Of a stretch of DNA of 64,000 bases, positions 9,951 through 59,486 are shown in pieces (position 1 is the first letter of the stretch; every line of letters starts with the position of its first letter). The notes beneath the pieces were generated by a model, which saw nothing but the letters and a program-made list of their open reading frames with translations, did no database searches and was not told the DNA's origin. The stretch covers positions 1,736,001-1,800,000 of the forward strand of contig NIVC01000010.1 of NCBI GenBank assembly GCA_002269645.1, read 5' to 3'. A program made the position numbers and the translations under genes. Source of the stretch: Macrostomum lignano. Lineage: Eukaryota.

Positions 9951-11624
9951 TTAGCGGTGGTTCTTCGACCAGCGTACAGGAGCATCGTCGCTTTCCTCTG
10001 ACAGATCTCTCTGGTGGCTGTGGCTCTCTTTTTGTCTTCCATGTCGTGCTCTACGAGTGGCAGCAATGCAATCAGCGCATTCAAACGTCTGTGCGTGCAA
10101 TGACAAGGTCACATAGGGACATTGGAAAAGCATTTCCTCACGGCTCTGCGTTGGCTGCAGTCTGCTGCCTTCGCGGCACCAATGGCGTGGGCGAGAGGCT
10201 GCCGTCCTCCGATCTGAAATAGTCGTTACCTGACCCCTCTTTTGCGACTTTTGATATGCCGGTCTGTCTGAGTTATTCTGTAGACGATGCAGAATACTCG
10301 GTTGGACCAAACGAATCTCATCGTCTTCCTCACGGCACGTCTCATCGTCAGGCTCATCTTGATAAAATTTACCAATTTCATAGGGCATTTTGCTCCTGTC
10401 TTGCCTTTCGTATCGCCTAATTCTTTCGGGCCACCCTAAGTCACTCGATGCATTATTTCCAGAATAAATTTTATCCATTCGACGCTCTGGATGACGCAAG
10501 GTTTGCTCCAACTGCGGCTGTTCTTTTGCAGGAAATTCCAGAGTTCTTTTAGGTTTCTGTTTTGGTAGCTCTTGCCTCTGAGGCTGATGACTTTGTGGCT
10601 GCAGGACCGCAGACTGTTGAGGCTTCTGGCCTGACTGTCGAGTATTTACTGGTTTTCGTCGATCGTCAACGTAGATTTCGTTTTGGTTGGATAAATTTTG
10701 CTCGTAGTCCCAGTTGGTGAAGTCGTTCCGTCGTTCATCCCTGTTGCTACGGCGAGACTGAGACTGCCGTTGCTGCTGCTGAGACTGTGGCAAATAATGC
10801 AGAGATGGTGAAAGCGGCATTGACGTCCGAGGAGACATTTCAGATTGCACTGGCAAATTGTAGTCAGCGTTGCATTTTGGCTCTTTTTGCAGTCTCTGCA
10901 GCTGACGATGCTGCTTCCGGTTTGATGTGTTCTTGTTTTGTCTAGCGATTCTAGCAAACTTTTTGGCGTAATATTTTGGATCAAAATTAGTTTGGTCATC
11001 GCTCATTTCCACTGAAGAATTATCCGACGCGGTGAGAGGAGAGAGAGCCACCTGGTAGGCAACTTTTGAGCTCTGCTGCTTTCCTCCGCTTCTTTCACAT
11101 GGGTCTTTTGACATTAACTGCCGCATGTGAGGGCTGCACAGCTGCATGAAGCGGCCTTTCATCGATCCTCTTTGCTGGGGCTGAGCTGGCTTGCTTTGCT
11201 TATTTTGTAACAGCAAAGAATTTGAAGGCAGTTTGCCTGTCCTGCCGCTTAGCAGGCTGCGATACTGCTCTTGGAAGAAATCTTCGGAACCGCTAGAAAC
11301 ATTGCTGGCGTTGTCCTTGCCGATTGGACTACGCGGATTTCTGGGTCCGATGCTGCCCAGATTTATAAGTTCACCGCTTTCTTGACTGCTAAAGTCGCGG
11401 TCTCTACTGGCGCTTCTTTCAGAATAGGACAACGCCTCCTGTATTTCGTTTAGTCGACTCGGGTTCTGATCGTAATTGTTGCTAAAAGATTGCCCAGAAA
11501 GACGCGGGCGTCGCGTTTGGCACGATCGGCTGTCCAATTGGCTGCAGCCCTGCTGGCTGCCGTTTTGGCGTCGTCTTCTTCGGCCTCCAGCGGCGCGACA
11601 CGAAGGTAGCACTTTTGTTGGCAT
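9951..11624 (-). CDS. Uncharacterised 557-aa S/Q/R-rich, probably disordered protein, single ORF
   Basis: 1674-bp ATG-initiated, non-repetitive ORF flanked by AT-rich DNA. No recognisable domain; a Cys/His cluster lies near the C-terminus (HWC...CPY...H...CADC). Confidence 0.6.
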   Translation of the reverse strand: MPTKVLPSCRAAGGRRRRRQNGSQQGCSQLDSRSCQTRRPRLSGQSFSNNYDQNPSRLNEIQEALSYSERSASRDRDFSSQESGELINLGSIGPRNPRSPIGKDNASNVSSGSEDFFQEQYRSLLSGRTGKLPSNSLLLQNKQSKPAQPQQRGSMKGRFMQLCSPHMRQLMSKDPCERSGGKQQSSKVAYQVALSPLTASDNSSVEMSDDQTNFDPKYYAKKFARIARQNKNTSNRKQHRQLQRLQKEPKCNADYNLPVQSEMSPRTSMPLSPSLHYLPQSQQQQRQSQSRRSNRDERRNDFTNWDYEQNLSNQNEIYVDDRRKPVNTRQSGQKPQQSAVLQPQSHQPQRQELPKQKPKRTLEFPAKEQPQLEQTLRHPERRMDKIYSGNNASSDLGWPERIRRYERQDRSKMPYEIGKFYQDEPDDETCREEDDEIRLVQPSILHRLQNNSDRPAYQKSQKRGQVTTISDRRTAASRPRHWCREGSRLQPTQSREEMLFQCPYVTLSLHAQTFECADCIAATRRARHGRQKESHSHQRDLSEESDDAPVRWSKNHR

Positions 11625-12330
11625 TGTTCACATTGAATTTCAAAGTTCGTGCTTAAGACGAAATCTATAGTTTACTATGAGTTCTTCATCGGTGAGGCTT
11701 TTAAATTCTTCACCATAGACTACTGATGGTTGTCTTCTAAAATCTTATTATCATGAAAGTACGAATCTAAGGCTTCAAAAAAGGATGTCAACTTCGTCCG
11801 TAATTGGAATCGGAATATTAGAGCGACTGTTTCGCTATCGAACTCAACTAGTGAACCGATGGGTGTCCTCGTAAAATAGGGAGTCCCTCCAAAAAGTCAT
11901 GGCTTCAATTAATTTGCTGATACCTCCGCGAAAAGGCATGATTTATGTTTTTTGCATAAAAACGATTACATCTTGTAGTTCTTGGGTGCAGTAAAATTAT
12001 TTTTTTCTGAATTGAAAACATCAAAACTATAGGGTAATTTTGGGGCTTAGTAAGAGTGCTTTATACATATTACAGAGTTGATTATAATACGGAGAATAGG
12101 TTAGTCGATAGTCGATAGTAAGATGTGAAGGTAAATAAAATTTATCAGTGTTTGAACTAAAGAGCGGTAATTTAATTTTTTTGCTGGCAATATTAATCAT
12201 AGTCGCTTTATGTCTGCCAATCGATTTCATCAATTATTAAAGATGGAGCATGGCAAAAACAACTATTTCAGCCGCTGTTGAGACAGTTCCTGAAATTTTG
12301 CGGAATTTTTTAAAAAAAGAAAGTATGTTT

Positions 12331-15300
12331 TTAAACGTAAACCAATGATAAAACATGCCTACTCACATCCAGTCTCTTTTTTATTTCCTCCTGCACGATG
12401 TTTGGAACCCAGTGACGAACTGGCTTCCGAAGTAGGCGCAACATTAGCTCCTGATCAGGGCAATACCGGGCACTGATTGCAATTTCTTGCAGGTCTGAGC
12501 CATTGCGATCAGCAACTGCTTGAATCCACAGGTAAGCGCGCTCGTCGCTAGGGACAAACTCGAGGCGCAAACCATGCAGCAAGGCGTCAAAGTTAACAAA
12601 ATAATACGTATTCATGTTTGACAGCTGCAATGGAAAGCATTCGGAGAAAAATCTGGGCAGAAAGTCAAGCAAAGGCTGCCGGCTGAACTTGAAGCAAAAC
12701 TTCCAAGCCGAATCACTGTTCGACAGGTGCTTCCGGACGAGATCTTCTGTGGCGTTATTTGCTGTCATTCTTGCGGACCAATCGATTCCAAGGCTCACAG
12801 GAAACTGCCCAAAGTCAGTCAGAATTTTCACTGCAGCCTCTTGTTGTCCCAACTTGAGACAGTTGAGCGCTCTGAGAGTCTCCCTAGCGGAGCGGGCGCA
12901 GTCTGGCAGTCGATCAGTTAACTCAGCAACTGTCTGCTGCGAATAAGCCTCGCTTTTCGCTGCGCTCAGTAAGTACAAGCAACGCCTCACCACACCGTAG
13001 ATCTCGTGGTATTTTAGCTCTTTAGACTGGGACATCGACCCAGGAAGATGTGGCAGAATTTGAAACGGGTGAAAGTAAAACACACCAGTCTCACCAAGTG
13101 GCTTCAAACTGTTCTTGTATTCTGCTAGATATTGCGGCAGGTTCCTGATCACCGTTTGCACGGCCTCCATTACAGTCTGCAAGGCTTGAATAACATCTTG
13201 CGGACTTTGTAAACTTAATCCTTTCAAATACAAGCTAGCATCGCACAGAAAGAAATGATTCATTATTCTCCCGTTTAAATTGTTTTCCGTACAGTTTTCT
13301 TTGATACTGTCGTATAGAACTTCCAAGGAGCGCTTAATAAGGTTTATTAGATTCTTTGGATCTTTCCAAGCTTCCACAGGGGTTTCTTCAACCAATCGAA
13401 ATGTCAAGGTTTTAGCGTGATAAGACTTCAAGCCTTGAATGTTTAATTTATCTTTGTTACCAATAACCTTCTTGACGAGATACTTGAGCGAGACAAAGAC
13501 CTGTCCCTGCAAAGTAGTCAGACTTCTCAGCAGTCGCTTCTCCAGAAAAGTTGTGCTCACCCTGAGCTGCTGGCCAGCCATGCCGGCTGGGGCTGCGTGG
13601 ACGATATGACACGGAGAGTCAACCAACTCGTCCTGGAGTGACTTCAGCACAGACTCGAGGATATTCGAGCGCCGCAATCGTTCCGGTAAAAGAGGCGCTA
13701 TTGGCGGATAGCAGCAGAGGCGACAGGCGTCAACATTGTCCACGGCGGGCTTGAGCTCCGACCCGTTGATCGGTTTGGCTGGATTCGACGCTGCGGAAAA
13801 GTAAGTGGAAAGCTCATGTGAAAAGAACTTTTGGATCTTTAAAATTTCTGGCACGTCCGATTTAAAAATTGCATGTGCTTGTTTTACTAGTCTCGAAAAA
13901 TTTACTGTATTCCAGTTCGTAAAAATCTAATAAAAAGTACATTTACATAATTTAACTCATTATTTTCTTTTTGCCCTAATTGATTGAAATTTTGAAGGTG
14001 TGTGTATACGGGTATTGGCTCCGCGATTTATATCAGCAGACGAGAAGTGAACGCTCGGAAAACGATGCTGGTCGATCGTAACTTCGAACCTCGATTTACA
14101 ACATGGAGTCTTGCACCTTTGAACTAGAAGTAACGCTCCTGTTTTTTTCTGTCCCAGTTTTAATGGCAACTGTCCTTTATGAACTTTTGATTGTTAAAAA
14201 CTCATTAGCTGAGTTTATATCCTCATGCTCTTTTGTTTGTAAAGAGTTACCTAGTTTAGTAAAACATAGCAATTAGCCCTATCAAGTAACCAGGGTACAC
14301 ACAAGGCCACAACCCTTTTGGGAATGTTTTTAAGGTTTTCTTTAGTAGGCCAGGCGCTCCCATAGACTTCGAAATGACATAAAGTGAAATTAACTCTTAC
14401 CAAATCCTGAAACGACAATATGACCATCTGCGTACTCCACTTTATCCGACTCGGATATTTCCGGGCAGCGACACGCACCTTTCAAGTGATACAGTCTGCC
14501 CGGAATCAGCTGCATCATATCGATGTCTGATTCGCTATCTGTACTGCCGTCAAGTACGGACAAATTGTTCCCCCAGCCTTCCGAGTAACTACCAACAATG
14601 TAATATCCATCGTACGAGTTCATATCGCGAACAATCTGCTGTAGTACATCCGCAACAGCCGTTTGAAGTGCAACCCTGGAGTCTACAAAGCCTGACAGAC
14701 GGAGGGCTGAGTTCAGTTCGTCGCTCTGCTGTGAGACGTCTTGCTCGCTGCAAAATTATTATTGTATTGAAGTTTTCTGTACGTATAATCGAAGTCGCTG
14801 TTCGATATAGCGACTTTTGTTTACAGATTCATCCGTGTTTTTATTCATTTGCTAATACCAGCTTCGTCGCTAATCAAACCGTACGTCAAAACCTGTTTTC
14901 ATAATATGATAAATTAATCAGTATTTCCCCTGGTTTCGTTGCTTTCTAAATATCATTCATATTGATTCTCCCAAAATTTCTAGCTGCACACCTACAGGTA
15001 ATAGAAGAACTAAATATACCTTATTTCCAGACGCTCTAACTTTACAGTAGATAAACTACAGAGGTAAAAAACTATGACTATTATGCATGTAGAATCAACC
15101 AATTTTCTGTGGACAGAGGCACTCAGAAATAAAAAAAATCATAGATGCTTACCTATCTGATTTTTCCACAGAATTCGTACTATCTTTAGCTTGGTCCGAA
15201 GAATCAGATTTCGACAAGATCTCTTCCACATTCGCTAGCGCCTTTTTTAGCAATGCGATTACTTTATAGTGCCGATTTTGCGAAGCAATGAAAACCGGTG

Positions 15301-17104
15301 TCGCTTTGTAGCTTGTCTGAATCGTTGGGTCTGCCTGTGCTTTAAGAAGCGCATCAACCACACTCCCGTGACCTTTCTGCGAGGCAATAAAGAGCGGCGT
15401 TTCTCCTGTAATTAGCTGTTGATTCACGCTTGCTTGAGCTGTTAAAAGCAGTTGCACAACGTTGCGATGGCCGAATTGTGACGCGACGTAGAGCGGCGAT
15501 GCGCCTGTTTCAGAGCAGGCGTCGATGTCTGCACCTGCTTTTAGTAGCAAGCGCACAATTTGGTAGTGTCCATTTTGTGATGCAATATAGGCCGGTGTCT
15601 CTCCGATTTTTGATTGAAGATTAACGTCGGCTCGAGCTTGGATAAGAGACTCGACAACTCTTAGGTGACCGTTTTGTGCAGCGATATACAACGGCGTTGC
15701 ACCGGACTTCGCCTGGAGATTAACATTTGCACCGTATCTAATAAGCAGGTCTACAATAATGCAATGACCTTCTTGCGATGCCGTGTAGATGGGTGACAGG
15801 CCGCTTCTTGATTGCAAGTTGACGTCGGCTTCGTTCTCGATTAGGCCTTTAACTATTTTATAATGAGCGTGTTGTGCTGCCACAAGCAACGGTGTCTGAC
15901 CGAGCTGGTCCTGGGCATTAACCTGAGCTGCGGCTCTAATAAGAGAGCGGACTACCCTTAGATGTCCATTTTGCGACGCAATAAATATTGGCGTTGCGCC
16001 TGAATTTGTTGGAATGTGAATATCCACGTTTGCTGCGATTAGCAGATCAACCACAAGGTTGCAACCTTTCTCGGCTGCGATGTATATTGCTGACGCTCCA
16101 TTGTTTCTCTGCAAATTAAGATCAGCCTGCCGCTCGATGAGCAGCCGAACGACCTCCGGGTGGTTTAACTGAGAAGCTATAAACAGTGGCGTCACCCCGT
16201 GACTTTCCTGAACGTCGCAGGTGGCTTGCGCTTTCAGTATTGCCTTCACCACTTCACCGTGGCCCATAAGAGATGCAATAAACAGTGGTGATTCACCGGA
16301 GCTTCTTTGAAGGTTTATATCGGCTTGAGCATTGATGAGCAATTCGACTGTATTAGCATGACCCTTCTGTGAAGCGATGTAAATTGGTGTTGCGCCCAAA
16401 TTTTCTTGCATGTTTACATCAGCTTGAGCTTTGATTAGCTCATCTACAACTCTGATGTAGCCATTCTGGGAAGCCGTGTACAGTGGCGATGATCCAAATG
16501 AGATTTTCTTCGCGTCAACATCAGCGCGTGCCAAAATCAGACGCCTGACAATATCGTGATGGCCACTTTGGGATGCAATCCAAATTGGAGTGATGCCATT
16601 GGTAGTTGCTAAATTCACATCCACATTGGCTTTAATCAGAGCCTGCACAATAAAACAGCGGCCCTGCTCTGATGCAATATAAACTGGTGTTGATCCGGAA
16701 ACGGTTTGAATATTTACATCAGCTTGATAGTCGATCAGCAAATTTACAACGGCAAGGTGACCCTCCTTGGACGCTAAGTAGAGAGGAGAAATGCCAAAGC
16801 TGTTTTGCAGATTGACGCTGGCACCGAAGTCAATCAAGACTCGAGCCGCATCAGTGCGTCCCTCTCGACTGGCTAAATGTAGAGGGGAGGTGCACATTCT
16901 GTCTCCAGTGGGCAGCACCAGTCGGTCAATGTCGGTCCTGGATTTCAATGCCGTTTCCAAGTCGCGTAAATTTCCATGCTTGATAGCCTGCAGTAAAAAT
17001 TCTTCAACAGCAGAATCTTTCCAGTCTTGTTTAGTAGAATCGCCAATAGCTTGCATCAAAGCTGATAGTGCTAGCTTTAAAAGTACACCAACAGCTAGCT
17101 GCAT
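12331..17104 (-). CDS. Ankyrin-repeat / Mab-21 (cGAS-like receptor, cGLR) nucleotidyltransferase fusion, ~1252 aa, 3 exons
   Basis: Exons 17104-15153 (17 ANK repeats plus one degenerate; donor GATAG|gtaagc), 14747-14401 (acceptor ttttgcag; GSYSEG...SDID motif; donor TTTG|gtaaga) and 13790-12331 (acceptor ttttccgcag; VDNVDACRLCCYP, RVSTTFLEKRLL, LKSYHAKTL Mab-21 motifs). Phases 2 and 1 match, and the total 3759 nt equals 1253 codons. Confidence 0.85.
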
Positions 17105-19985: not shown

Positions 19986-22900
19986 TTAAGTTTCTCCAGC
20001 TCCACTTGACTGCGTCAAAGCGAACATTGGAGCCTGCGCAATGAGCAGCTCAACGGCGTCCTCGCGCCCCAGTTCCCGCAGAACGTCAACCAGAGCTCCG
20101 ACATTGGTGCCGCCCGGCCCGCCGACTCGTCGCCACTCGTCCAGCAGGACAGCCGTTCGGCTGCGCAGCCACTCGTTGCCGCTGTGCACCGCGGGCACGG
20201 AGTGGATCAGGCCGAGCCGCACTGCCAGCAGGCACCAGTCCTTGCCGAGCGGATCCGGCGGATCAAACATGCGGCAGAGGCGCTGCAGAGTCGGGGCTCT
20301 AAGCGACGACAGTGGAAGCTGGGGGCCCAGGGTTAGATGCGACAGTAGCTCTCGGCTGCCAAAGCAGATCAGGTTTTCCAGGTCCTCTTCTTCTTCCTCC
20401 TCGTCTTGTGTCTCATCGCACGTTGAACCGCTGGCGGGAAACGCGATCGGGATAGTTGGCGGCGGAAAGCTGATCAAGCTGCCCGACTCACTGGACTCCC
20501 CTGTTGTGCTTTGGTGCTTCTGCATTGCTCGAAACACGGCACTCTGCGGCACGGCCAGTTTAAGTCTCCTTGGAAACTGACGCAGCTCTTTCGGGCTGAG
20601 CAAAGCCAGATCGAACTCTAGGCCGGGGCACATGTCGTCAATTGTCTGCTCCAACAGGCCGGCGATGTCTTGGCAGATACCAAACAGAAGCTGGGCCCGG
20701 GCCGGCGGACCCCTGGCTCGAAGTCGGATCAGCTGATCCGATTCTTCGAGTTGCAGCATGCACTCGACGCAGCCTTCCAGAGACAGTTTTGAGCCGTGGA
20801 ACCATTGGAAGAGATCGATGCGCAGCGGCTCCAAAGGCGGTGGTCTGCAGGCGGCTGCTTGAATACTCCGACGCAGACGGCACTGAACTCGAGGGAAAAT
20901 ATGCACTAGCTGGGAGGCGGCCATCGATGCCTTCAGTTGCCAGCCGCCATACACTGAGTTCTCGTGCTGAGCTGTCGGCTCCCATGGACTTCGGCCGCTC
21001 TCCAAGAAGTTCAAACAGGGAAACTCGTATTGAACATCTTCGTCACTGTCAGAATCTTCGGCGCCACCATCGAGGTCAGCTCGAGTGCAGAGATCCAGTG
21101 CAGACAGCAGTCGAACCAGCTGATCAGCAGCAGTTTCGCCCGTCATGAACTGAACGTCATTCACTGAGAATGTACCTGTGACGCGAGCCTGCGCAATGTT
21201 GTCATACGACAAAAGGTAGCCTAGTACATCGGAACAGAGCCACTGCGGACTGAGCACAATCATGTCCTGCTCTACTTCTGATTCTAGGTAGACGACATCG
21301 CCGGTGTATTGCAGTTCCTGGATGAGATCTTTCAGATGATCGTCTGAGCACAATGGGTTGACTTTGCCCCGTACGGCTTCAATAAACTGCTGCCAGGTGA
21401 AAACTGGGAATTCTGTGGCTCCAGCCCATTCTGGTAGTCGGCTCGCCACAGTGTCGAGAAGACCATTGCCTCGAGGCAGGTGCCGCAAAATTTCCGTTCG
21501 CCAATCAGCCAGTCTCTGTCGAAGCGACTTCATTTCAGCAGACATTGCCTCGCTGGTGTCAACCGCGAAGACCTCGTGGCAAACTTCGAGCCTGTACTGA
21601 GCCAATTCCTGCACCTCGAGAAGCAATCGGTCAGCGTCTGCACTCTCAAGGAGACCACGCGGTCCGTCGCCACGAAAGACAGTCGCCGCATCTGCGTGCG
21701 TTCCAATAAGCAGCACTCGGGCGAGGGTCTTTGGCTTGCCGCAGTATCCTAGAGGTTCCCTTGGTGGCAATCGGGCCAGCAAAAAGTGCAGCCAGAACAG
21801 GACCTTCTGACGCATCGTCTCGTAGCATTCCGCTAAGCTGAACAGAATGGCGTGTACGCACGAAGTGTCGCCAATAAAATGATCGTAAAACAGATAGTAG
21901 GGCTCGTAACCAGAGAATTCCCACACGCTGAAGTCCCCAGCGCCAGTGATGTTCAAGTTTTGAACAGCTATGCCGCGTGTGTAGGCCTCGTGTTGGGCGT
22001 CAAAGCTAATTTCTGATGGTGCAAAGGACCGCTGCAACAGCGAGAAGCACTGCCGTCGGTCCAACTCGTCGTCACAGTCGCCAACAATTACTTGACCAGT
22101 GGAGGCGCCGCTTCCCCCACCGCCGCCGCTGCCGCCGGCAAGAAACGTCCGACGCAAAAAGCCGGTGATTCGGTTCGAGCGCAAACTGTCAATTAGAGCA
22201 GTCTTTCCGCTGCCGCTGTGACCGAACACCTTCAGCTTGATTCTGGGCAGGCTGCGCTGAGTAGGCACCAGCTGCTCAACGCAGACCGCTCGTCGCTCAG
22301 GTCGCATCCGGCCCAGTAAACTGGCCGTCATTGTGTGACCCTGCGCGAGTGACATAACCTCGGGTAGAAGGCCCTCTTGACTCGCCAGCTGCGGATTAGC
22401 GCCGGCGAGAAGAAGACAGCGAACAACTTCAAGATGACCAGCTCTGGCCGTTTGATGCAGTGGCGTGAGTCCTTGGACGTTGACAGCGTCAACTCGACAA
22501 CCGTAGGCACACAGCGCTTGGACAACTGGCAGCTGCCCTAAACGACTCGCTGCATGCAATGGAGAGTCGCGTTCCGACGAGTCGAGCTGATCAAGCGGTG
22601 CTCCAGCGCTTATTAGTAGCATAGCCATAGCCTGGTGCTGTCGTTGAATAGCATGTCGCAGCGGACCCCAGCCCTCGCTGTCCGGAATATCCGGTCGAGC
22701 CCCGGCACGAAGGAGGACGCGCGCGACTTCGATGCCCAAGGATTCGCTGACGATCTCGGAGGCCGCTATCACTAGCGGCGTGCGCTGGTGCCGCCTGTCG
22801 CGCGAATTCGGATTGGCGCGTCGACTGCCGAGTAGAAGTAGGCGCAGAATAGTCAGGTGACCCCCGCGACAGGCCAGGTGTAGCGGAGTCTCACCAGCTC

Positions 22901-23324
22901 GATTCTGGCCCTCCGGGCACACCGATCTATCCAGGAAAAAAGCCGCCACCTCGTCGTTGCCGACGTGGCTAGCCAGGTGAAGACCATTTTCGCAATCGGT
23001 GTTCAACTGGTGCAGGTCGGCGCCTCGCTGCTCCAACACCATCAGAGCCTCGACGGAACCGCTATCCGCCGCAACGTGCACGACCGTTCGACCACTGCTG
23101 TCGCGACAGTTCAGGTCGACAGTAGGCGGTAGGGTCAGCAATGCGTCGCGAACTTGGCTGGGATCGCCGCTTGCGGCAGCTTCAAACAGGCCGGCCAGCG
23201 GGAAGGACGCATCACCGCCTGCCGCTTCGCCTTCGCCGGTATTCAAAGAAGCGTCGTTAGCATCGTTCGCCAAGGAGTTGACGCCGTCCGCAATGCTTGA
23301 GCCGTCAATTTCTAGTAGACTCAT
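19986..23324 (-). CDS. DAPK1: DAPK1-like Roco protein (ankyrin repeats - ROC - COR - death domain), no kinase domain, intronless, 1112 aa
   Basis: About 8-9 ANK repeats; P-loop IKLKVFGHSGSGKT; DAPK-type G3 FSVWEFSGYEPYYLFYDHF; COR LQYTGDVVYL...LSPQWLC; death domain DPPDPLGKDWCLLAVRLGL...LLDEW. An in-frame TAA lies two codons upstream of the ATG. Confidence 0.9.
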   Translation of the reverse strand: MSLLEIDGSSIADGVNSLANDANDASLNTGEGEAAGGDASFPLAGLFEAAASGDPSQVRDALLTLPPTVDLNCRDSSGRTVVHVAADSGSVEALMVLEQRGADLHQLNTDCENGLHLASHVGNDEVAAFFLDRSVCPEGQNRAGETPLHLACRGGHLTILRLLLLGSRRANPNSRDRRHQRTPLVIAASEIVSESLGIEVARVLLRAGARPDIPDSEGWGPLRHAIQRQHQAMAMLLISAGAPLDQLDSSERDSPLHAASRLGQLPVVQALCAYGCRVDAVNVQGLTPLHQTARAGHLEVVRCLLLAGANPQLASQEGLLPEVMSLAQGHTMTASLLGRMRPERRAVCVEQLVPTQRSLPRIKLKVFGHSGSGKTALIDSLRSNRITGFLRRTFLAGGSGGGGGSGASTGQVIVGDCDDELDRRQCFSLLQRSFAPSEISFDAQHEAYTRGIAVQNLNITGAGDFSVWEFSGYEPYYLFYDHFIGDTSCVHAILFSLAECYETMRQKVLFWLHFLLARLPPREPLGYCGKPKTLARVLLIGTHADAATVFRGDGPRGLLESADADRLLLEVQELAQYRLEVCHEVFAVDTSEAMSAEMKSLRQRLADWRTEILRHLPRGNGLLDTVASRLPEWAGATEFPVFTWQQFIEAVRGKVNPLCSDDHLKDLIQELQYTGDVVYLESEVEQDMIVLSPQWLCSDVLGYLLSYDNIAQARVTGTFSVNDVQFMTGETAADQLVRLLSALDLCTRADLDGGAEDSDSDEDVQYEFPCLNFLESGRSPWEPTAQHENSVYGGWQLKASMAASQLVHIFPRVQCRLRRSIQAAACRPPPLEPLRIDLFQWFHGSKLSLEGCVECMLQLEESDQLIRLRARGPPARAQLLFGICQDIAGLLEQTIDDMCPGLEFDLALLSPKELRQFPRRLKLAVPQSAVFRAMQKHQSTTGESSESGSLISFPPPTIPIAFPASGSTCDETQDEEEEEEDLENLICFGSRELLSHLTLGPQLPLSSLRAPTLQRLCRMFDPPDPLGKDWCLLAVRLGLIHSVPAVHSGNEWLRSRTAVLLDEWRRVGGPGGTNVGALVDVLRELGREDAVELLIAQAPMFALTQSSGAGET

Positions 23325-25285: not shown

Positions 25286-26097
25286 CTAATTTCAAATTTC
25301 AGATACTAAAACTAATTCTCTAATTTTGTTTTGAATTTTATCAACAGAATATTTTTCCTCATTTAATAGCAATTTGATCTGACTTCTTTCCAGACACTGT
25401 TTCTAGGACTTCTTGGCCTATGCGAGATGTTTATCGCAAATAATGGCTTTCGCTCCCACAATCCGTTTGCCGAGTGAACTAAAATAGCCTGCCTTGGGAA
25501 AAGAGAGGAGAGAGGGAGAAAGTCGAAGTCAAGTGCGCTTCGTGGAAAAGGTGCAGCAGTCTTCCATCGGGGGTTATGACTAAACTATAAGACTCGTATA
25601 TATACTGCATGCAGTCCCAGTCAGTCACTTCAGTCAACTATTCGAATCCAGCCCTGGGAGATTTCGACTGGCTGAAGGGCTAGACTTTTATCAGCTACGC
25701 CGCATCTGTGTGGTCCAGCCCTCAGTCTACGCTCGTAACAGAGAAAGTTCAAGTCGGCCCAGGAATGCGAGATGCTGCGATTATTGGGGGGGGGGGGGTT
25801 CGTTCGCGTGGCGCAAGTGTATTGGGGTGTGGAGGGCAGGGCAAACTTGCCGTCGAAGTTGCGTGAAATTTCACAAAAGTCACAGCTGCTAGTAGATGAT
25901 TCTGACAAAATATGTCAGGCCCATGCCGCTGACCCCTGTAAGTTTTAGTTAGAGGCAGGGGGCACACCCTGGCGCACTTTAGGCGACATTGTCACACATT
26001 AGCAAGAGGCAATACTGCCCATCCCGCCGACACCCCTGAGCAAGCGCACGGATACGTACGCAGCCATACGCACAGGCACACACTCACACAGGAGTTT

Positions 26098-27789
26098 AGC
26101 TGAGCCACTTCCGCTTTCAGAGCTGCTATCTCGGCGGCTGCCCTGGACTCCTGGCTGTTGCCAGCCGCTGCGGCCTGACCCCCCCCCCACCATGTGCACA
26201 GCTCGCTTGCCCTCGGGCTCCATCAGAGCCAACGATGCCCTCACTTGACGCACCCGCCTAATAGCGTCCTGGAGCGTCTCTGGCGCTTGCAGCAGCACGC
26301 TCTCCAGCACCCGGGCTGGCACCCGAATCCCCTTCAAAAACCTGTCTTTCACCAACTCTTCTCGCTGGGCCGCTGGCAGCATTGGGTACGATTTTCTCAT
26401 AAGCTCCTTGAGCACGTCTGCATACTCTTCAATGGGCTCGCCATCTTTCTGATTCCTACTCTGGAACTCGGTCTTGTAATCTTGAGCAGTCCTATTCTCA
26501 TCAAACCTAGCTTCTAGCTGCTCAACAAACTCTGCATACGGCAGATCGTCGGCCAACTCAAGATTCGCAACAGCCTTAAAAGGAGTATTAAAGTCAAGCA
26601 GACTGAGCAGCGCCTGCTTGCGCTGATCCCCTAGAATGTGAGCCGCCTCACAATACCCTGAGAACTGCTGCATCCAAAGGGCAAAGTCCTGTGTGGGCAC
26701 GTACTTATTTGGCCTCGGCACCCGCTGTGCCACATTAAGCTCATTTTGCAGACGCACCGTCAGGGCGTCAATCAGATCGTCTAATTGGCCATGGCTACAA
26801 AAACACAGAGACAACCGAAGCAAACAACACACAAATAATCTAGACAACACACAAAACCCTAAACACACGGCAGGACAGCAGGGGAGAGGACCGCTAATCC
26901 TGGTCACGGCACCACTTGTTGTGTCTCGGCCTAATGGCCGCTGGACGGGTCAAGGTTCGGGCCCTCCCCGCCTGAGACACCCCGGTCCCAGCCCTCACCC
27001 CGGCTATTCCTACCCTGTCTCGCTCGGTTCGGCGAGAGTTCGCCGGACCGACCACCCTGGGATCAGCGAGAGTTCACTGGTCCCAGGTCCCTACAGATCC
27101 CGGCCCCACGCGGCAACTCAGGAGAAGAAAGCACGCGCTCACCTCTGCGTTACAGACTTATTCGCGAAGCGTTTATTGGCACGAAGCAGAATAATCAGCG
27201 ATTGCGGGAGTCACGAGTTATTAGCTTGCAGAGAGCAGGTTTGCAGAGGGACGCCGACGAATGGGATAGAATACAAACAAAAAGAAAGAAACGTGGAGCG
27301 CAGCACGCTCAGGGCTAGCCCTTAAATAATATAACACAAAAAGGGGGAGGGGTGGGGCAGAATGGAGAGGGCGAGCCAAACCCTGGGGCCCAGCCAGCTT
27401 ATCAGCCAGCCAGCCAATACGAGCAGCCCCAGGGTGAGGCGGGCAAAGAGGGAGAGGGTAGGGTCAGCACCCAGATTGGACAGAAGTTGGGCCGGGGGCT
27501 GGGTGCAGAAAGGGGTAGGCCAGGGTTAAGGCTTACGCCTCTCACAAACCCTGGCCCGGGCGCGAGACGGGGGACGGGGCGGGGTGGCATGAAAACTGAA
27601 TACACAATCACTGGAAGGGCGCAGCCCAACATTTGGCATGTACACTTCACTGTGCCTTGGGGGTTGGACGAGCAGAGCCAAGCCGAGATTCCAATTTAGC
27701 CCCAAATTAGTGTGACTGCACTTGGAATCGAGCCTGGACCCCTGGTACATCAGAGCGCCACGCTGACCCCTGACCCCTATGTGTGAACA
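26098..27789 (-). mobile_element. Truncated Ty3/Gypsy LTR retrotransposon: candidate 5' LTR + PBS + frameshifted gag
   Basis: Gag-like translation (FALWMQQFSGYC...EFQSRNQKDGEPIEEYADVLKELMRKSYP...VKDRFLKGI) with frameshifts just after ATG 26792 and at a G10 run (26179-26188). The LTR 3' end ...ACAACA is at 26917 and AATAAA at 27177-27172. The LTR 5' end is uncertain (TGTT at 27336 or 27789). No pol and no second LTR. Confidence 0.75.
26896..26914 (-). other. Primer-binding site complementary to the tRNA-His 3' end
   Basis: TGGTGCCGTGACCAGGATT lies 2 nt after the LTR-terminal CA and is complementary to the ...TCACGGCACCA end of eukaryotic tRNA-His. Confidence 0.8.
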
Positions 27790-29059
27790 GATTTTATAAG
27801 AAGACTTCATCAAATCATAATTTTCATCTTCATTCTGAGATTAAATCATTGACTATCTCAATGATGTTGAAATACTGTTGTCATTTCATATTTTCCGTAA
27901 AAAGTGCATAAAAATGAATGGAATACATACTGTTAAAATTATCCATCTGCACAAATAAATACTTTCAATGGGATGATATGAGAGAAAGCAGATGGATATT
28001 TCTTGCAAATCTTACAAATCGTGAAATGCGATGTCATTTAAGCGCTAATTTTCCTCAATTCAAAAAAGTACAGAACGTCCTTAAATTAAGTTGTCTCACC
28101 GGTCCTTTAGGAATAAATTTTTTTCGCAAGCGGGGTTCCTTCGTTAGCTAAGAGCAGCGTTATTCCACATTCAAATGGAAATTAGATTTTTGTAAGAAGT
28201 GGCATGGAAGCTGGGAATTTTGCATGACAAAGCTTCTTGATGACTGCTTACTGGATAGTCGGTGCTAAAAGCACTAATACCAATACTTAATATTCATACT
28301 GGTAGAATTCAGCGCTTTTCACGTTCATACTACTATTACTAATTCTCAGTAGCAACTGAAGCACTTGAATGAAAAACACAGCAGAGATTTACGGTCTGTC
28401 TGGTGTCAGGTGTCTGACAAATTAAAATCAATCAGGTATTGGGAAGTTTAGCTGTAACTGAGCAGCAAACTCATTTTCATTCTAACTGTTTCTTTCATGT
28501 CACTTCCGTAATTGAAAGAGGCTGAGCCTGGGCATCGAACAGGGCCAGAAAGAGACAGTAAGTCTCCGCTAATGCTCTGCAGCTTCATCAAAAAGTCATA
28601 CACCATGCAGACGCTGTGTGGCCAGGAAGAGGCAGAAGATTCCTAATTGAAAGAAGATGATGATATGCAGTCGTGGCAAGTCTCCAAAGCAATATGCGCA
28701 CATGAGATAAAAAGGTTCCACCATTGGAGTGAAGATTCACTGCTGCTACAAGCAGCTCTTTGCGATGGCTTTCTATAGACAAAAAATAGGCTGATGCCTA
28801 ACGAAGCAAGGCCCTACTGACACGACTGCTCAAGACTCAGTTAAACGTGAGCAGCCCGTAATTCATTCCAGCTCAGGGCTTGATGCCCCCTATTGTACTC
28901 GCAGCCGCGCCTCATCTGGAATCTGTGTGTCTGGGCTGCCCTGGATTCACTCCATCCCTTCCATGCCGTGTGAGCTAAATGTAGAAATTCTGAGACCTCT
29001 GATTGCCCAGCTGATGGAGCTTGTGAGGCTTAATTTTGGCTGGGAAATTCGGTTTCTAA

Positions 29060-29420
<361 letters not shown>

Positions 29421-30161
29421 CATATTCTCAATTTCCAATTAACGCACCAATTGGCAATCAATGGAAGTATTAAGCTGCCAATAATCCAGCCATTTCTGGC
29501 ACCGGGCGCTGACCAGCCGCCCAGTGAGTGCACTATAAACATCTGGCCTGTTTGAACTCACTGTTTATACTAAGGCCCCGGCAGGCCTCAGTTGACATTG
29601 CCAGAATTCTGCAGTCGTGCTGGCAGGCCTTCATCATCTGTTGCCCATAGCGGCAGTCCAGCTTCCATTCCATAACAGTTGGCGAAGAAAATATTTTATC
29701 CTGCATAATTCATCGCCAACCACAGAGCGGTTTTAACGTCTCGCGACACCCCGTGTCTTTTTCCTGCAACCCTCCCCTTTTTTCTTGAGGTTTTCTGTCA
29801 GCCTCGCACCCGGCGTCTTTCGCACGCGCAAGGCAATAACTTCTTGTTGGCAAAGGTTTGTTTTAACTGGTAAACTAGCTTGCGCCGTTCGTTTCTTTGT
29901 TGCGGCGGTTGCTTTTTCTAAAGCAGTTCATATTTGTTTGCCCTCGAGAGTAGCTGGGGCTCAGGGCGCGACTTCTTTTAGTTGAATATTCAACAAATAA
30001 CTGGGTCGCAACAACTGGTAGTGCCCGGTTTCATTATCGTCAACTGCTAAGAGGGAAATCAAGCATTGATTGGGGAGTCGCCTATTTTAGTGACAAAGGG
30101 GAGATGGATAACTCACCATTATTTCAAGCTGATGTGTCTGAGTTTCCATGAGCTAAAGATT

Positions 30162-30910
30162 GTGCTTGACGCCATTTTTGGTTTTGATTGTGTTTGACGC
30201 CATTTTTGGTTTTGATTGTGATTGACGCCATTTTCGGTTTTGATTGTATTTGACGCCATTTTTGGTTTTGATTGTATTTGACGCCATTTTTGGTTTTGAT
30301 GGCGTTTGACGCCATTTTTGGTTTTGATTGTGTTTGACGCCATTTTTGGTTTTGATTGTGTTTGACGCCATTTTCGGTTTTGATTGTGTTTGACGTCATT
30401 TTCGGTTTTGATTGTGTTTGACGCCATTTTTGGTTTTCATTGTGTTTGACGCCATTTTTGGTTTTCATTGTGTTTGACGCCATTTTTGGTTTTGATTGTG
30501 TTTGACGCCATTTTCAGTTTTGATTGTGTTTGACGCCATTTTCGGTTTTGATTGTATTTGACGCCATTTTTGGTTTTGATTGTATTTGACGCCATTTTTG
30601 GTTTTGATGGCGTTTGACGCCATTTTTGGTTTTGATTGTGTTTGACGCCATTTTTGGTTTTGATTGTGTTTGACGCCATTTTCGGTTTTGATTGTGTTTG
30701 ACGCCATTTTCGGTTTTGATTGTGTTTGACGCCATTTTTGGTTTTCATTGTGTTTGACGCCATTTTTGGTTTTCATTGTGTTTGACGCCATTTTTGGTTT
30801 TGATTGTATTTGACGCCATTTTCAGTTTTGATTGTGTTTGACGCCATTTTTGATTGTGCTTGGCGCCGTTTGATGGTTTTGATTGTGCTTGGCGCCGTTT
30901 GATGTTTCTT
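30162..30910. repeat. 28-bp minisatellite, about 26 copies, with a 308-bp higher-order period
   Basis: Unit TGTTTGACGCCATTTTTGGTTTTGATTG. The variant GATGGCGTTTGAC recurs at about 30299 and 30607 (11 units apart). Confidence 0.95.
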
Positions 30911-31311
30911 ATTGTGTTTGGCGCTTCTTGGATGGCACAGATTGCCTTTGATGCCAGCTGGATGGCCTCTTTGCTGGGATTTCAGAAGCTCACAAGAAGT
31001 CAGAATTATTTAACATTGTTATTCCTTGCTTTTTTATTTCTGGACAAAAAAATAACGTAAAACATTTAATGCACCTCTTTAGAAATTCCATCAACAAGCG
31101 TCTTATTGAGGTGTAAGTTAATCCTCTTGACATCCAATTCACCTGAATTTATAAAAATAGCCTCATGGGCGACACTCCGCAGCCAATCAAAGCAGTCCAC
31201 CAATCGCCTGCAAGCTTGTAGATTTCTTTTCGAGGCAGGCATGAGCGACATCTTGATATCAGTCGGTCAGTCGGTGGTCGCCGCTCAGATCTGCCATCTG
31301 AGAGAATCCGC

Positions 31312-49235
<17,924 letters not shown>

Positions 49236-50175: not shown

Positions 50176-50187
50176 TTGGCGACGAAG

Positions 50188-58352: not shown

Positions 58353-59486
58353 TTAGATAAACTTGGATCTGATCAATTTAATTGGCAGTCGAAGTTTCAA
58401 TTGTCGCATCACCCGAACAAACTGATAAGGAAACGGCGCTTTGATAACTGACACTGATGCAGAATCGCTAGGCGATTTGCTCGGATCCACTGGCACAGCA
58501 ACGCGTTGGCAGTGCAAGAACAATGGCAAATCTCTAGCCCTAGCTGGCCGAATACCCAGTCTAGTTAGTGTGCTCTCCGGCAATCGTTGGGGCATCAGCC
58601 GATCTCGCATGCTCGAATACTTGTGATCACCGAGCACTGGCGTGTTCAAACCATAGCCCAGATGCACCCGGATCTGATGCTTGCAACCTGTCAATGGTTG
58701 GACTTCAACCAGAGCGCATCGTTCGAATTTGTCAACAACTCGATACCGGGTGACAGCTTCTTTAGCTCCCGACCTGCTCGAAGCTGTCGGCACCCGAGCT
58801 CTAGTCAGCACCGTCAAGTTGGCTTCATCGAGAGCCGACTGAGTCGGGCGTAAGGCCGCTCGCCAATCACAGTCTCTATGCTTAGCCGAAGCTGTCAACG
58901 GGATGTCAACGATGCCCTCCAACGGACTGGGCACATCGCGAGTTATACAATAATAGTACTTTTCTATACGGCGTTCTTTAAAACAGAGCTTTAAATGTCG
59001 AGCCTGCTGCTCGGTGCGAGCTAACAGTACAATGCCAGTTGAAGTTCGATCGATTCGATGCACCGGGTGCAGGTGAGGACAAGACAGTCGAGCCGCAAGG
59101 CCTGGCAGGTGATCGATTAAGTTAACTGATCCGCGAGCAACTGTGCCACCCTGACAGCACACATTGTAGGGCTTGTTAATTGCTACAATGCCGTATTTAT
59201 CCCAGACAATGTTCTTATAAAGAAATTCGACAATTTCATCAGGCTTTAGGCTGGCGAATGACCAGGTACGCTTGTTGGGTAGAACAGACCCGTCTTCTTT
59301 GTCTATGGGATTGTTAATAGGCATTTTATCGCCTTGTTTCACTTGAGCAGACGACTCAGATTTAGCCATTTTTTCACTGTTATTAATCATCTCAGTACGA
59401 ATTTTCAAAGCATAGTCAAATGCAGTGGCACTAGATGCATAGCATCGGGTGAAGGCTGGCAGTAGTGGCATCATTGATGAAAACAT
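58353..59486 (-). CDS. RPUSD4: RluA-family RNA pseudouridine synthase, RPUSD4-like (probably mitochondrial), intronless, 377 aa
   Basis: Catalytic HRIDRTSTG, KYYYCI, TGCKHQIRVHL and PVLGDHKYS motifs; N-terminus resembles a mitochondrial presequence. Confidence 0.85.
   Translation of the reverse strand: MFSSMMPLLPAFTRCYASSATAFDYALKIRTEMINNSEKMAKSESSAQVKQGDKMPINNPIDKEDGSVLPNKRTWSFASLKPDEIVEFLYKNIVWDKYGIVAINKPYNVCCQGGTVARGSVNLIDHLPGLAARLSCPHLHPVHRIDRTSTGIVLLARTEQQARHLKLCFKERRIEKYYYCITRDVPSPLEGIVDIPLTASAKHRDCDWRAALRPTQSALDEANLTVLTRARVPTASSRSGAKEAVTRYRVVDKFERCALVEVQPLTGCKHQIRVHLGYGLNTPVLGDHKYSSMRDRLMPQRLPESTLTRLGIRPARARDLPLFLHCQRVAVPVDPSKSPSDSASVSVIKAPFPYQFVRVMRQLKLRLPIKLIRSKFI

What the first reader, a model, noticed from the sequence alone, without database searches (positions are those of the whole stretch)
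12331..17104. Hidden ankyrin-repeat cGAS-like receptor: 17 ANK repeats spliced onto an apparently intact cGLR nucleotidyltransferase
Seen: the ankyrin ORF stop (15149-15151) lies inside a GTAAGC donor. A 347-nt exon missed as a full ORF carries GSYSEG-x15-SDID, and the third exon carries a candidate third acidic residue (VDNV) plus the Mab-21 RVSTTFLEK and SYHAKT motifs. Both introns are phase-compatible, giving 1252 aa. Established: animal cGLRs (cGAS, Drosophila cGLR1) make cyclic dinucleotides that activate STING, and typically sense nucleic acid. Inference: a long ANK solenoid could replace nucleic-acid sensing with protein-ligand sensing or autoinhibition, giving an NLR-like sensor-enzyme. 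I cannot tell whether this architecture is already catalogued in this lineage.
Basis: partly seen in the sequence, partly recalled or inferred. Interest (0 to 1): 0.88.

Follow-up and report, generated by a model that had tools for sequence, protein, structure and literature searches.

The report
Flatworm ankyrin-repeat cGAS-like receptor gene
This is a real gene of the flatworm Macrostomum lignano that joins 17 ankyrin repeats to a cGAS-like enzyme domain with its catalytic residues in place, but it is already annotated in GenBank and its family was catalogued in 2023, so it is a correct reading rather than a discovery.

Summary
On the minus strand, exon 1 (17104..15153; 17 ANK repeats), exon 2 (14747..14401; GS and DID motifs) and exon 3 (from 13790) join in frame through canonical GT/AG introns. 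One correction: a 77-nt third intron (12366..12290) was missed. The product is 1249 aa and ends at 12263, not 1252 aa ending at 12331.

This 1249-aa sequence is exactly GenBank PAA94479.1 (BOX15_Mlig023862g1, Macrostomum lignano, contig NIVC01000010.1). That annotation was built from RNA-seq transcript assemblies, so the gene is not hidden.

An AlphaFold model of the C-terminal 601 aa (pLDDT 88) matches cGAS and Cv-cGLR1. Profile comparisons reach Sp-cGLR1, cGAS and bivalve cGLRs. G703-S704, D725/D727 and D784 fit the published cGLR active-site motif and are conserved among paralogs.

M. lignano has dozens of such ANK-cGLR paralogs. Li et al. 2023 list several as ANK-cGLR fusions and cloned five without the ANK part. 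None is among their 15 named active enzymes.

Enzyme activity, ligand and receptor remain untested. A conserved ~255-aa C-terminal domain with no structural match is the one unexplained part.

The parts
12263..17104 (-). Whole coding range of the gene: four exons, 1249 aa. It is identical to GenBank PAA94479.1 (BOX15_Mlig023862g1), Macrostomum lignano contig NIVC01000010.1.
   Evidence: The called gene in L003 (16221-21062) maps to window 17104..12263 and has a 1249-residue product. The exact sequence look-up found it.
15153..17104 (-). Exon 1 (1952 nt, residues 1 to 651 in part). It encodes an N-terminal hydrophobic helix, an ANK cap, 17 ANK repeats and the start of an acidic Ser/Asp/Glu-rich linker.
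   Evidence: ORF 15149..17104. Pfam Ank E = 7.6e-114. The start is shared with paralog P0016 (MQAILKALASVLMQAAG).
15215..16900 (-). Array of 17 ankyrin repeats (residues 69-630) at a 33-residue period. Consensus: xxGxTPLYIASQxGHxxVVxLLIKAQADVNLQx.
   Evidence: Repeats are in register. Mean pairwise identity is 42%. Variability is highest at the beta-turn tip positions and on the outer helix.
14748..15152 (-). Intron 1 (405 nt, phase 2). Donor GTAAGC, acceptor TTTTGCAG. The TAA inside the donor is the stop of the unspliced ANK ORF.
   Evidence: Paralog P0016 has an intron in the same place and phase with the same GTAAGC donor.
14401..14747 (-). Exon 2 (347 nt, residues 652-766). It encodes the linker end, the spine helix and the first part of the NTase core, with GS (14593..14588) and D725-I-D727 (14527..14519).
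   Evidence: G52, S53, D74 and D76 (C-part numbering) are invariant in 16 family members.
13791..14400 (-). Intron 2 (610 nt, phase 1). Donor GTAAGA, acceptor TTTTCCGCAG.
   Evidence: Paralog P0016 has its junction at the same residue and phase. Relatives align contiguously across it.
12367..13790 (-). Exon 3 (1424 nt, residues 767-1241). It encodes the third catalytic Asp D784 (13740..13738), RVSTTFLEK (R843, S845, E850), KSYHAKT (Y890, K893), the Mab-21 C-terminal helix bundle and then the family-specific C-terminal domain.
   Evidence: hhalign places D784 on the third catalytic Asp of Cv-cGLR1 and on the invariant Asp of bivalve cGLRs. Profile hits to Sp-cGLR1 and cGAS fall here.
12290..12366 (-). 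Intron 3 (77 nt, phase 0). Donor GTGAGT, acceptor TTTCAG.
   Evidence: Only the model with this intron reproduces the deposited 1249-aa protein.
12263..12289 (-). Exon 4 (27 nt): ELSQQRLK plus the stop TAG (12265..12263).
   Evidence: The resulting end...KKRLDELSQQRLK, resembles the paralog end ...VEERLQELRAPK (P0004).
12266..13113 (-). C-terminal domain (residues ~993-1249) beyond the end of the cGAS fold. It is conserved in the family (FHPF, LPDCARSARE-LRAL, DSAWKFCF, Y-NFDAL). Fold and function are unknown.
   Evidence: hhalign to Sp-cGLR1 ends at C-part residue 341, which is the template's C-terminus. AF2 gives pLDDT 81.6 and pTM 0.85. Foldseek finds nothing in PDB (best E 1.6) or BFVD (best E 2.5). 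Pfam finds nothing.

Best explanation
SHOWN. Window 12263..17104 (minus strand) is one four-exon gene of Macrostomum lignano. It is already deposited as PAA94479.1. Its 1249-aa product has these parts in order:
- a short hydrophobic N-terminal helix;
- a 17-repeat ankyrin solenoid;
- an acidic flexible linker of about 40 aa;
- a cGAS-like receptor (cGLR) nucleotidyltransferase core with every motif residue present;
- a family-specific C-terminal domain of about 255 aa.
It is one of dozens of paralogs of an ANK-cGLR family expanded in this flatworm.

INFERRED. It works as a cytosolic sensor-enzyme of the cGLR type. In the resting state the NTase core is inactive. Engagement of a ligand switches it on, and it condenses NTPs into a nucleotide second messenger, most likely a cyclic dinucleotide, that a downstream receptor reads. 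The ligand is unknown. It may bind through the ANK concave surface and/or the C-terminal domain, because the core is near-neutral to acidic (pI 6.1) and lacks the zinc thumb and basic tail of vertebrate cGAS.

The large, divergent paralog family suggests a diversified recognition repertoire. The gene structure and family assignment are near-certain (about 0.97). The stated confidence refers to the inferred mechanism.
For: Gene model:
- Canonical splice sites and an open frame.
- Exact identity to the deposited protein.
- The annotation derives from RNA-seq-guided transcript assembly plus TransDecoder.
- Intron positions and phases are conserved in paralog P0016.
- Relatives align contiguously across the junctions.

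cGLR identity:
- AF2 model of the C-terminal 601 aa: pLDDT 88.2, pTM 0.89. GS follows strand 1, DID sits on strand 2 and D784 sits on a later strand.
- Foldseek top 50 hits are all cGAS or Cv-cGLR1 (E about 1e-6, probability 1.00, TM 0.50-0.60 on the target).
- Family profile against PDB: Sp-cGLR1 E = 7e-8, cGAS E about 1e-7.
- hhalign: Sp-cGLR1 probability 96.4. Cv-cGLR1 alignment places D784 on its third catalytic Asp. Bivalve cGLRs from the Li screen give probability 99.3, E = 1.3e-20.

Selection on catalysis:
- G, S, D and D are invariant and the third D is nearly invariant among 16 members that are only 32-59% identical to this protein.
- R843, S845, E850, Y890 and K893 are also invariant. 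From my own knowledge these correspond to cGAS nucleotide-contact residues; only the Sp-cGLR1 and Cv-cGLR1 alignments were checked here.

Family context:
- 85 clusters at 50% identity reach E <= 1e-30. All ten sampled are M. lignano. Most full-length ones carry ANK repeats.
- Li et al. 2023 classify M. lignano paralogs as ANK-cGLRs.

Against plain nucleic-acid sensing:
- Core pI is 6.1.
- No H-x5-CC-x6-C zinc thumb.
Against: - No enzymatic data exist for this protein.
- Five M. lignano paralogs were cloned without their ANK part by Li et al., and none carries one of the 15 'active cGLR' labels in Table S3. Their result in the primary TLC screen cannot be read from the held text.
- The single sequence scores below Pfam's cut-off for Mab-21_C (18.4 against 24.1 bits), and no Pfam NTase-domain model hits it.
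- Sequence-profile alignments do not reach the N-lobe.
- The GS-to-DxD spacing (20) is at the upper limit of the published motif. V replaces Q/T before GS, and N follows D784 where a hydrophobic residue is usual.
- Whether M. lignano has a STING is unknown. cGAS and STING are reported absent from Schistosoma.
Confidence: 0.55

Rival explanations
1. Catalytically silent Mab-21-type scaffold. The cGLR fold is kept for binding or assembly, as proposed for MAB21L1/2, and the ANK array only mediates protein-protein interactions. No nucleotide signal is made.
For: None of the five screened M. lignano paralogs is among the 15 named active enzymes. The sequence is weak against curated Mab-21 models. 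There are small departures from the canonical motif: V for Q/T, N after the third Asp, and the maximal spacer. Most flatworms keep only Mab21-like proteins.
Against: GS, both Asp of DxD, the third Asp and the R/S/E/Y/K residues are invariant or nearly so across paralogs only 32-59% identical to this protein. That is the pattern expected under selection for catalysis. Li et al. placed these proteins among cGLRs with predicted complete active sites, apart from the Mab21L1/2/3 group. The screen used ANK-less constructs and only dsDNA or dsRNA as candidate ligands, so a negative result is weak.
Confidence: 0.2
2. Active nucleotidyltransferase, but not a classical cyclic-dinucleotide-to-STING pathway. 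The product could be a linear or otherwise different oligonucleotide. Alternatively the signal could be read by a non-STING receptor, or in cis by the conserved C-terminal domain acting as a built-in effector or regulator.
For: A ~255-aa conserved C-terminal domain with a confident model and no structural relative is attached to every full-length family member. STING is reported absent from other flatworms and was not shown for M. lignano here.
Against: All characterised animal cGLRs make cyclic dinucleotides (and my own knowledge of cGAS and Drosophila cGLR1). Nothing in the sequence points to a particular alternative product.
Confidence: 0.15
3. The fusion is an annotation artefact. The ANK ORF and the Mab-21 ORF are translated as two separate proteins, for example through intron-1 retention, which stops at the TAA inside the donor.
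For: The ANK ORF has its own ATG and an in-frame stop immediately after the donor. M. lignano primary transcripts can be polycistronic and trans-spliced.
Against: Exon 2 has no upstream start that would give the conserved spine helix (one search lists only a truncated 77-aa ORF). Intron position and phase are conserved in a paralog. Dozens of independently annotated paralogs have ANK and cGLR in one product. The deposited CDS comes from assembled transcripts.
Confidence: 0.03
4. Decaying or unexpressed duplicate in a recently polyploid genome. The frame is intact by chance of youth and the gene has no function.
For: The M. lignano assembly is highly redundant and the family is very large.
Against: The nearest relative over most of the C-terminal part is only about 50-54% identical, and short partial matches reach 64-65%, so this is an old paralog. 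It still has a 1249-codon open frame, intact splice sites and all conserved residues. A transcript-based gene model exists.
Confidence: 0.05

Closest known systems
Macrostomum lignano ANK-cGLR paralogs catalogued by Li et al. 2023 (for example PAA86972.1, PAA45980.1, PAA68676.1, PAA58690.1, PAA67649.1, PAA68216.1)
   Same: Same species and same architecture: N-terminal Ank_2 domains, then a cGLR core, then the same C-terminal extension. Same motifs (GSxxEGWGNSL...SDIDh, RVSTxxLE, LKxYHAKT).
   Different: This paralog (PAA94479.1) is a distinct gene, 32-36% identical to the four screened ones that I aligned. It has one of the longer ANK arrays (17 repeats). I could not find its accession in the held supplements, but Tables S1 and S2 were truncated when stored.
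[quoted passage not shown] 2023, Fig. 4C)
   Same: A cGLR NTase core fused to ANK repeats, interpreted as a ligand- or protein-interaction module.
   Different: They belong to another phylum (Cnidaria). Sequence relationship to this family was not tested here. No evidence was seen that they share the C-terminal domain.
Bivalve cGLR radiation (Crassostrea, Mizuhopecten; Li et al. Table S3 rows 81-83 and 94-98)
   Same: This is the closest non-flatworm profile match (hhalign probability 99.3, E = 1.3e-20). It shares the GSxxEG...SDxDh signature and an invariant third Asp.
   Different: No ANK array is seen in the stored constructs, which begin just upstream of the NTase core. The flatworm family has a 9-residue longer GS-to-DxD loop and a much shorter DxD-to-third-Asp segment (54 aa). 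The flatworm C-terminal domain is not matched by the weaker 600-750-aa hits of the exhaustive search.
Human/mouse cGAS, Sp-cGLR1 (8gjy) and Cv-cGLR1 (8gjw)
   Same: Same fold (Foldseek). Same catalytic motif layout. Shared R-x-S...E and SYHxKT elements.
   Different: 13-17% identity over the Foldseek alignments. This protein has no zinc thumb and no basic N-terminal tail. Its core is near-neutral to acidic (pI 6.1). It has a long ANK N-terminus and an extra C-terminal domain. Ligand and product are unknown.
MAB21L1/MAB21L2 (developmental Mab-21 proteins)
   Same: Same Mab-21 fold family. There is a weak profile hit (5eog, E = 0.23).
   Different: Li et al. state that the Mab21L1/2/3 group lacks a predicted functional active site. 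This family keeps GS, DxD and the third Asp invariant or nearly so.

Membership tests
cGLR (criteria of Li et al. 2023) | Active-site motif h[QT]GS-x8-20-[DE]h[DE]h-x50-90-h[DE]h | tested here: met
   The motif reads I-V-G703-S704, x20, D725-I-D727-M, x54, V-D784-N. There are two deviations: V at the Q/T position, as in the M. lignano proteins that Li et al. accepted, and N after D784. G, S, D and D are invariant and the third D is at least 90% conserved in 16 members.
cGLR (criteria of Li et al. 2023) | Sequence homology across both the NTase core and the C-terminal helix bundle | tested here: inconclusive
   The segment from the third-Asp strand to the end of the helix bundle is met: hhalign E = 1.3e-20 to bivalve cGLRs, probability 96.4 to Sp-cGLR1, and PDB profile E = 7e-8. 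The N-lobe (GS and DxD strands) is not reached by any sequence alignment. It is covered only by the structural alignment (about 390 columns) and by the motif.
cGLR (criteria of Li et al. 2023) | Predicted structural homology to known cGLR or CD-NTase enzymes (AlphaFold2 model) | tested here: met
   The model has pLDDT 88.2 and pTM 0.89. All 50 top PDB matches are cGAS or Cv-cGLR1, with probability 1.00 and TM 0.50-0.60 on the target.
cGLR | Synthesis of a nucleotide second messenger that depends on the catalytic acids | not testable with these tools
   This needs recombinant protein and TLC or LC-MS. Five ANK-less paralogs were cloned by Li et al. and are not among the 15 named active enzymes.
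cGLR | Convergence of the three acidic residues on a two-metal site | not tested
   Model coordinates are not exposed by the tools. Only the DSSP order is seen: strand 48-51 then GS, DID at the start of strand 74-88, and D133 in strand 131-140, in C-part numbering.
cGAS proper (vertebrate dsDNA sensor) | Zinc thumb H-x5-CC-x6-C and a basic DNA-binding surface or N-terminal tail | tested here: not met
   No such motif is present. Core pI is 6.1. The N-terminus is an ANK array.
Ankyrin-repeat proteins (Pfam PF00023 / PF12796) | Tandem 33-residue ANK repeats above the curated score | tested here: met
   Ank scores 365 bits against a cut-off of 21.1, with 16 stretches. Ank_2 scores 404 bits. 17 repeats are in register.
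Mab-21 (Pfam PF20266, Mab-21_C) | Score at or above Pfam's gathering threshold | tested here: not met
   This sequence scores 18.4 bits against the 24.1 cut-off, E = 0.0024. Several paralogs do carry a precomputed PF20266 hit, and profile methods recover the relationship.
cGLR-STING pathway | A STING (TMEM173) receptor encoded in the same genome | not tested
   There is no STING in the 64-kb window. No tool here searches the M. lignano proteome by family. M. lignano is absent from Li et al. Table S5.

The most novel reading that the evidence does not exclude
The ANK solenoid would be a direct protein- or ligand-recognition module that gates the cGLR core, giving an NLR-like sensor-enzyme. The conserved C-terminal domain of unknown fold would be a new regulatory, oligomerisation or effector domain. 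The dozens of divergent paralogs would then form a diversified, non-nucleic-acid pattern-recognition repertoire in an early-branching flatworm, a phylum otherwise reported to have largely lost cGLR signalling.
Probability: 0.15. Interest if true: 0.7.

Novelty: already known. Interest (0 to 1): 0.22.

Why it matters
As a finding it adds little. The protein has been public since 2017, and ANK-cGLR fusions, including those of this species, were described in 2023.

It does matter as a pointer. No ANK-fused cGLR has a known ligand or a shown activity. M. lignano is a transgenic- and RNAi-tractable animal carrying dozens of them. The family also has a conserved C-terminal domain with no structural relative.

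If the ANK or C-terminal parts gate catalysis, this would be a first example of a cGLR that senses something other than nucleic acid through an appended domain. It would also explain why ANK-less constructs are not among the named active enzymes of the published screen.

Tried and rejected
- Three-exon model ending at TAA 12331 (1252 aa). Rejected: the exact look-up fails for parts of it, and the annotated range ends at 12263. The four-exon model reproduces the deposited protein.
- A further exon inside intron 1 or intron 2. Rejected: relatives align contiguously across the junctions.
- A second Mab-21 copy or tandem array in the window. None found. The only other ANK hits belong to the neighbouring ANK-Death gene.
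- A different Macrostomum species as source, suggested by the top hit being only 54% identical. Rejected: the neighbouring ORF and this protein are exact GenBank M. lignano entries. simply did not return the window's own product.
- Single-sequence Pfam and PDB searches of the C-terminal part gave only sub-threshold hits. Profiles were needed.
- hhalign of the family profile against single cGLR sequences or the bivalve profile did not extend into the N-lobe.
- My regular expression for counting the motif across paralogs mis-anchored on DSES-type strings. I used the alignment instead.
- C-terminal domain: Foldseek against PDB and BFVD, Pfam and PADLOC gave nothing.
- ANK per-position entropy. 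Variability is high at the canonical binding-surface positions but also on the outer helix, so it is not discriminating.
- STING in M. lignano could not be tested. No STING sequence was available from the held supplements, and I did not type one from memory.
- The accession PAA94479 was not found in Li et al.'s supplements, but Tables S1 and S2 are truncated in the held copy, so this says nothing.

Full report
**1. The observation**

On the minus strand, the 651-codon ANK ORF (17104..15149) ends in a TAA that lies inside AG|GTAAGC.

Exon 2 is 347 nt and encodes IVGSYSEG-x15-SDIDM. Exon 3 carries AVDNV, RVSTTFLEK and KSYHAKT, as stated. The ANK region has 17 repeats at a strict 33-residue period (residues 69-630), preceded by a degenerate cap. 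Pfam Ank gives E = 7.6e-114.

**2. Is the splice model real?**

Three independent lines say yes.

- Nine relatives give tblastn matches whose query coordinates run straight on from exon 2 into exon 3. P0020, for example, matches residues 577-687 and then 688-920. No coding piece hides in the introns.
- In the genomic locus of paralog P0016 (L001) the annotated protein is reproduced only with an intron of phase 2 after the ANK exon (donor again GTAAGC), a 350-nt second exon, and an intron of phase 1 at PGY|ASTP. That is the same residue and phase as SGF|ASNP here.
- The neighbouring 1112-aa ORF of the window is an exact GenBank protein on contig NIVC01000010.1 of M. lignano assembly GCA_002269645.1. 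The gene called next to it spans exactly window 17104..12263 with a 1249-residue product.

The 68 extra bases and three fewer residues are explained by a third intron: GTGAGT at 12366 to TTTCAG at 12290, 77 nt. With it the protein ends ...KKRLD|ELSQQRLK*. This 1249-aa sequence is letter for letter PAA94479.1 / A0A267HAB2, 'hypothetical protein BOX15_Mlig023862g1'.

The GenBank annotation of that assembly was made from a genome-guided transcriptome (STAR/StringTie/TACO plus a mapped de novo assembly, with ORFs by TransDecoder), not ab initio. By arithmetic, window position w corresponds to contig position 1,736,000 + w.

**3. What the C-terminal 601 aa are**

Alone, the sequence gives only sub-threshold hits: Mab-21_C at 18.4 bits against a cut-off of 24.1, and PDB cGLR1/cGAS at E 0.04-0.1.

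With an alignment of relatives, the AlphaFold2 model is confident (pLDDT 88.2, pTM 0.89). Its 50 best PDB matches are all cGAS or Cv-cGLR1 (E about 1e-6, probability 1.00, about 390 aligned columns). A family profile reaches Sp-cGLR1 (E = 7e-8) and cGAS (E about 1e-7).

hhalign results:
- Probability 96.4 to Sp-cGLR1, ending at that protein's C-terminus.
- The query's P-AVDNVDACRL aligns with Cv-cGLR1's PIDVDLVPAIRI, which places D784 on the third catalytic Asp.
- Probability 99.3, E = 1.3e-20, to a profile of bivalve cGLRs taken from Li et al.'s Table S3.

Measured against Li et al.'s own definition, the motif reads I-V-G703-S704, x20, D725-I-D727-M, x54, V-D784-N. It fits except for V at the Q/T position, which is shared by the M. 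lignano proteins they accepted, and N after the third Asp.

In 16 family members that are only 32-59% identical to this protein, G, S and both Asp of DxD are invariant, and the third Asp is kept in all but one. R843, S845, E850, Y890 and K893 are invariant too. The model's strand order fits a Pol-beta-type NTase: strand then GS, DID opening the next strand, and the third Asp on a later strand. I could not measure the metal-site geometry because coordinates are not exposed.

**4.

The cGAS-like fold ends at about residue 992. The last ~255 residues form a separate domain that is conserved throughout the family (FHPF, LPDCARSARE-LRAL, DSAWKFCF, Y-NFDAL). It is confidently modelled on its own (pLDDT 81.6, pTM 0.85). 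It has no match in PDB (best E 1.6), BFVD, Pfam or PADLOC.

In the exhaustive search, the weaker hits of 600-750 aa (E 1e-11 to 1e-17) match only profile positions of about 106-320, not this domain.

The protein also begins with a hydrophobic 20-residue helix, shared with P0016 and P0004. The ANK and NTase parts are joined by an acidic linker of pI 4.05.

**5. Family and literature**

The word-indexed search found 35 relatives. All 33 that carry a species label are M. lignano, and many are already annotated with Ank plus Mab-21. The exhaustive profile search found 979 proteins at E <= 0.001 and 85 clusters at 50% identity with E <= 1e-30. Many of these are 1100-1400 aa with the cGLR part at the C-terminus. 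All ten that I looked up are M. lignano. Of 52 with more than 400 aa aligned, at least 27 carry ANK motifs upstream. Over most of the C-terminal part the closest relatives are about 50-54% identical to this protein. Short partial matches reach 64-65%.

Li et al. 2023 (PMC9980059) report:
- ANK and TPR fusions among about 3,000 cGLRs.
- That 'most platyhelminthes' have only Mab21-like proteins.
- In Table S2, Ank_2 domains in M. lignano cGLRs PAA58690.1, PAA67649.1, PAA68676.1, PAA86972.1, PAA45980.1 and PAA68216.1.
- In Table S3, five M. lignano proteins (rows 89-93) expressed from just upstream of the NTase core, that is without ANK.

None of those five carries one of the 15 'active' labels. 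PAA94479.1 itself was not found in the held supplements, but Tables S1 and S2 are truncated there. No other paper in the library links Macrostomum with cGAS or cGLR in substance.

**6. Mechanism**

Shown: one polypeptide with an ANK solenoid, a flexible linker, a cGLR core with a complete and conserved motif, and an unknown C-terminal domain.

Inferred: a ligand-gated nucleotidyltransferase that makes a nucleotide second messenger. A simple nucleic-acid sensor of the cGAS type is less likely. The core has pI 6.1, whereas Li et al. find a higher pI for nucleic-acid-sensing cGLRs. There is also no zinc thumb. Hence the appended ANK and/or C-terminal domains are the best candidates for ligand recognition or autoinhibition.

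The ANK repeats vary most at the beta-turn tip and first-helix positions that form the usual binding face, but also on the outer helix, so this is not a test.

Rivals:
- A catalytically silent scaffold.
- A non-STING output, possibly read by the C-terminal domain.
- An annotation artefact, judged very unlikely.
- A dead duplicate, judged unlikely given the old divergence and intact frame.

STING in this species was not testable here. It is reported absent from Schistosoma.

**7. Verdict**

The interpretation 'ANK repeats spliced onto an apparently intact cGLR' is supported. 'Hidden' and the high interest score are not. The gene is deposited, transcript-based, and belongs to an architecture already catalogued in this very species.

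What remains open for the whole family is whether it is active, what it senses, and what the C-terminal domain does.

Noticed in passing
window 19986..23324 (-): A single 1112-aa ORF in a GC-rich block (57-59% GC against about 43% around it). It has ANK repeats, a weak COR-A hit and a C-terminal Death domain (E = 3.8e-14). It is an exact GenBank M. lignano protein and is 99% identical to PAA66579.1. Its 90% cluster also holds 1741-1893-aa products named Ser/Thr kinase, so it looks DAPK-like. It lies 2.9 kb upstream of the ANK-cGLR gene on the same strand.
   Followed up: partly
window 12266..13113 (-), residues ~993-1249 of the product: A conserved C-terminal domain beyond the cGAS fold. The AF2 model is confident, but there is no match in PDB, BFVD, Pfam or PADLOC. 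It is restricted, as far as sampled, to the Macrostomum family.
   Followed up: yes
window 17042..17104 (-), residues 1-21: A hydrophobic or amphipathic N-terminal segment, MQLAVGVLLKLALSALMQAIG. It is shared with paralogs P0016 (MQAILKALASVLMQAAG) and P0004 (MGFLQRLFSAVAACCLRVFG, which also has Gly2 and a Cys pair). It could be a membrane-association signal. This was not tested.
   Followed up: no
window ~14490..13714 (-), residues 738-792: Conserved His and Cys residues in the insert between DxD and the third-Asp strand: H738, C743, C745, H760 and C792 (YHLKGACRC...GH...CRLCCYPP). H738 and C792 are invariant in 16 members. They might form a zinc site unrelated to the cGAS zinc thumb. This needs coordinates.
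   Followed up: no
window 29055..47524: A dense run of micro- and minisatellites, 17 TRF rows (some overlapping) with periods of 4 to 218 nt. Examples: 45528..46968 (48-nt unit, 30 copies), 35417..36327 (12-nt unit, 76 copies) and 39693..40312 (ATCT, 155 copies). The run coincides with strong AT skew. An Ig-domain exon (40902..42011, +) sits among them.
   Followed up: no
window 25999..26907 (-) and 50176..52314 (+): Retroelement remnants: a weak gag-like ORF, and a 712-aa ORF with an integrase core (rve, E = 5.9e-14) in a second GC-rich block.
   Followed up: no
window 54460..56470 (+) and 58353..59486 (-): Two adjacent Tudor-domain ORFs, probably exons of one gene, and a pseudouridine synthase ORF (PF00849, E = 3e-28). 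The latter is not in the protein collection as an exact sequence, so its true model is probably spliced.
   Followed up: no
window 9951..11624 (-): A 557-aa Gln/Arg/Ser-rich low-complexity ORF directly downstream of the ANK-cGLR gene on the same strand. It has no Pfam hit and no exact match in the collection.
   Followed up: no
tool behaviour: The word-indexed homology search did not return the window's own product (PAA94479.1), although that protein is in the collection as a cluster representative. The best listed hit was 54% identical, which briefly suggested a different species.
   Followed up: yes
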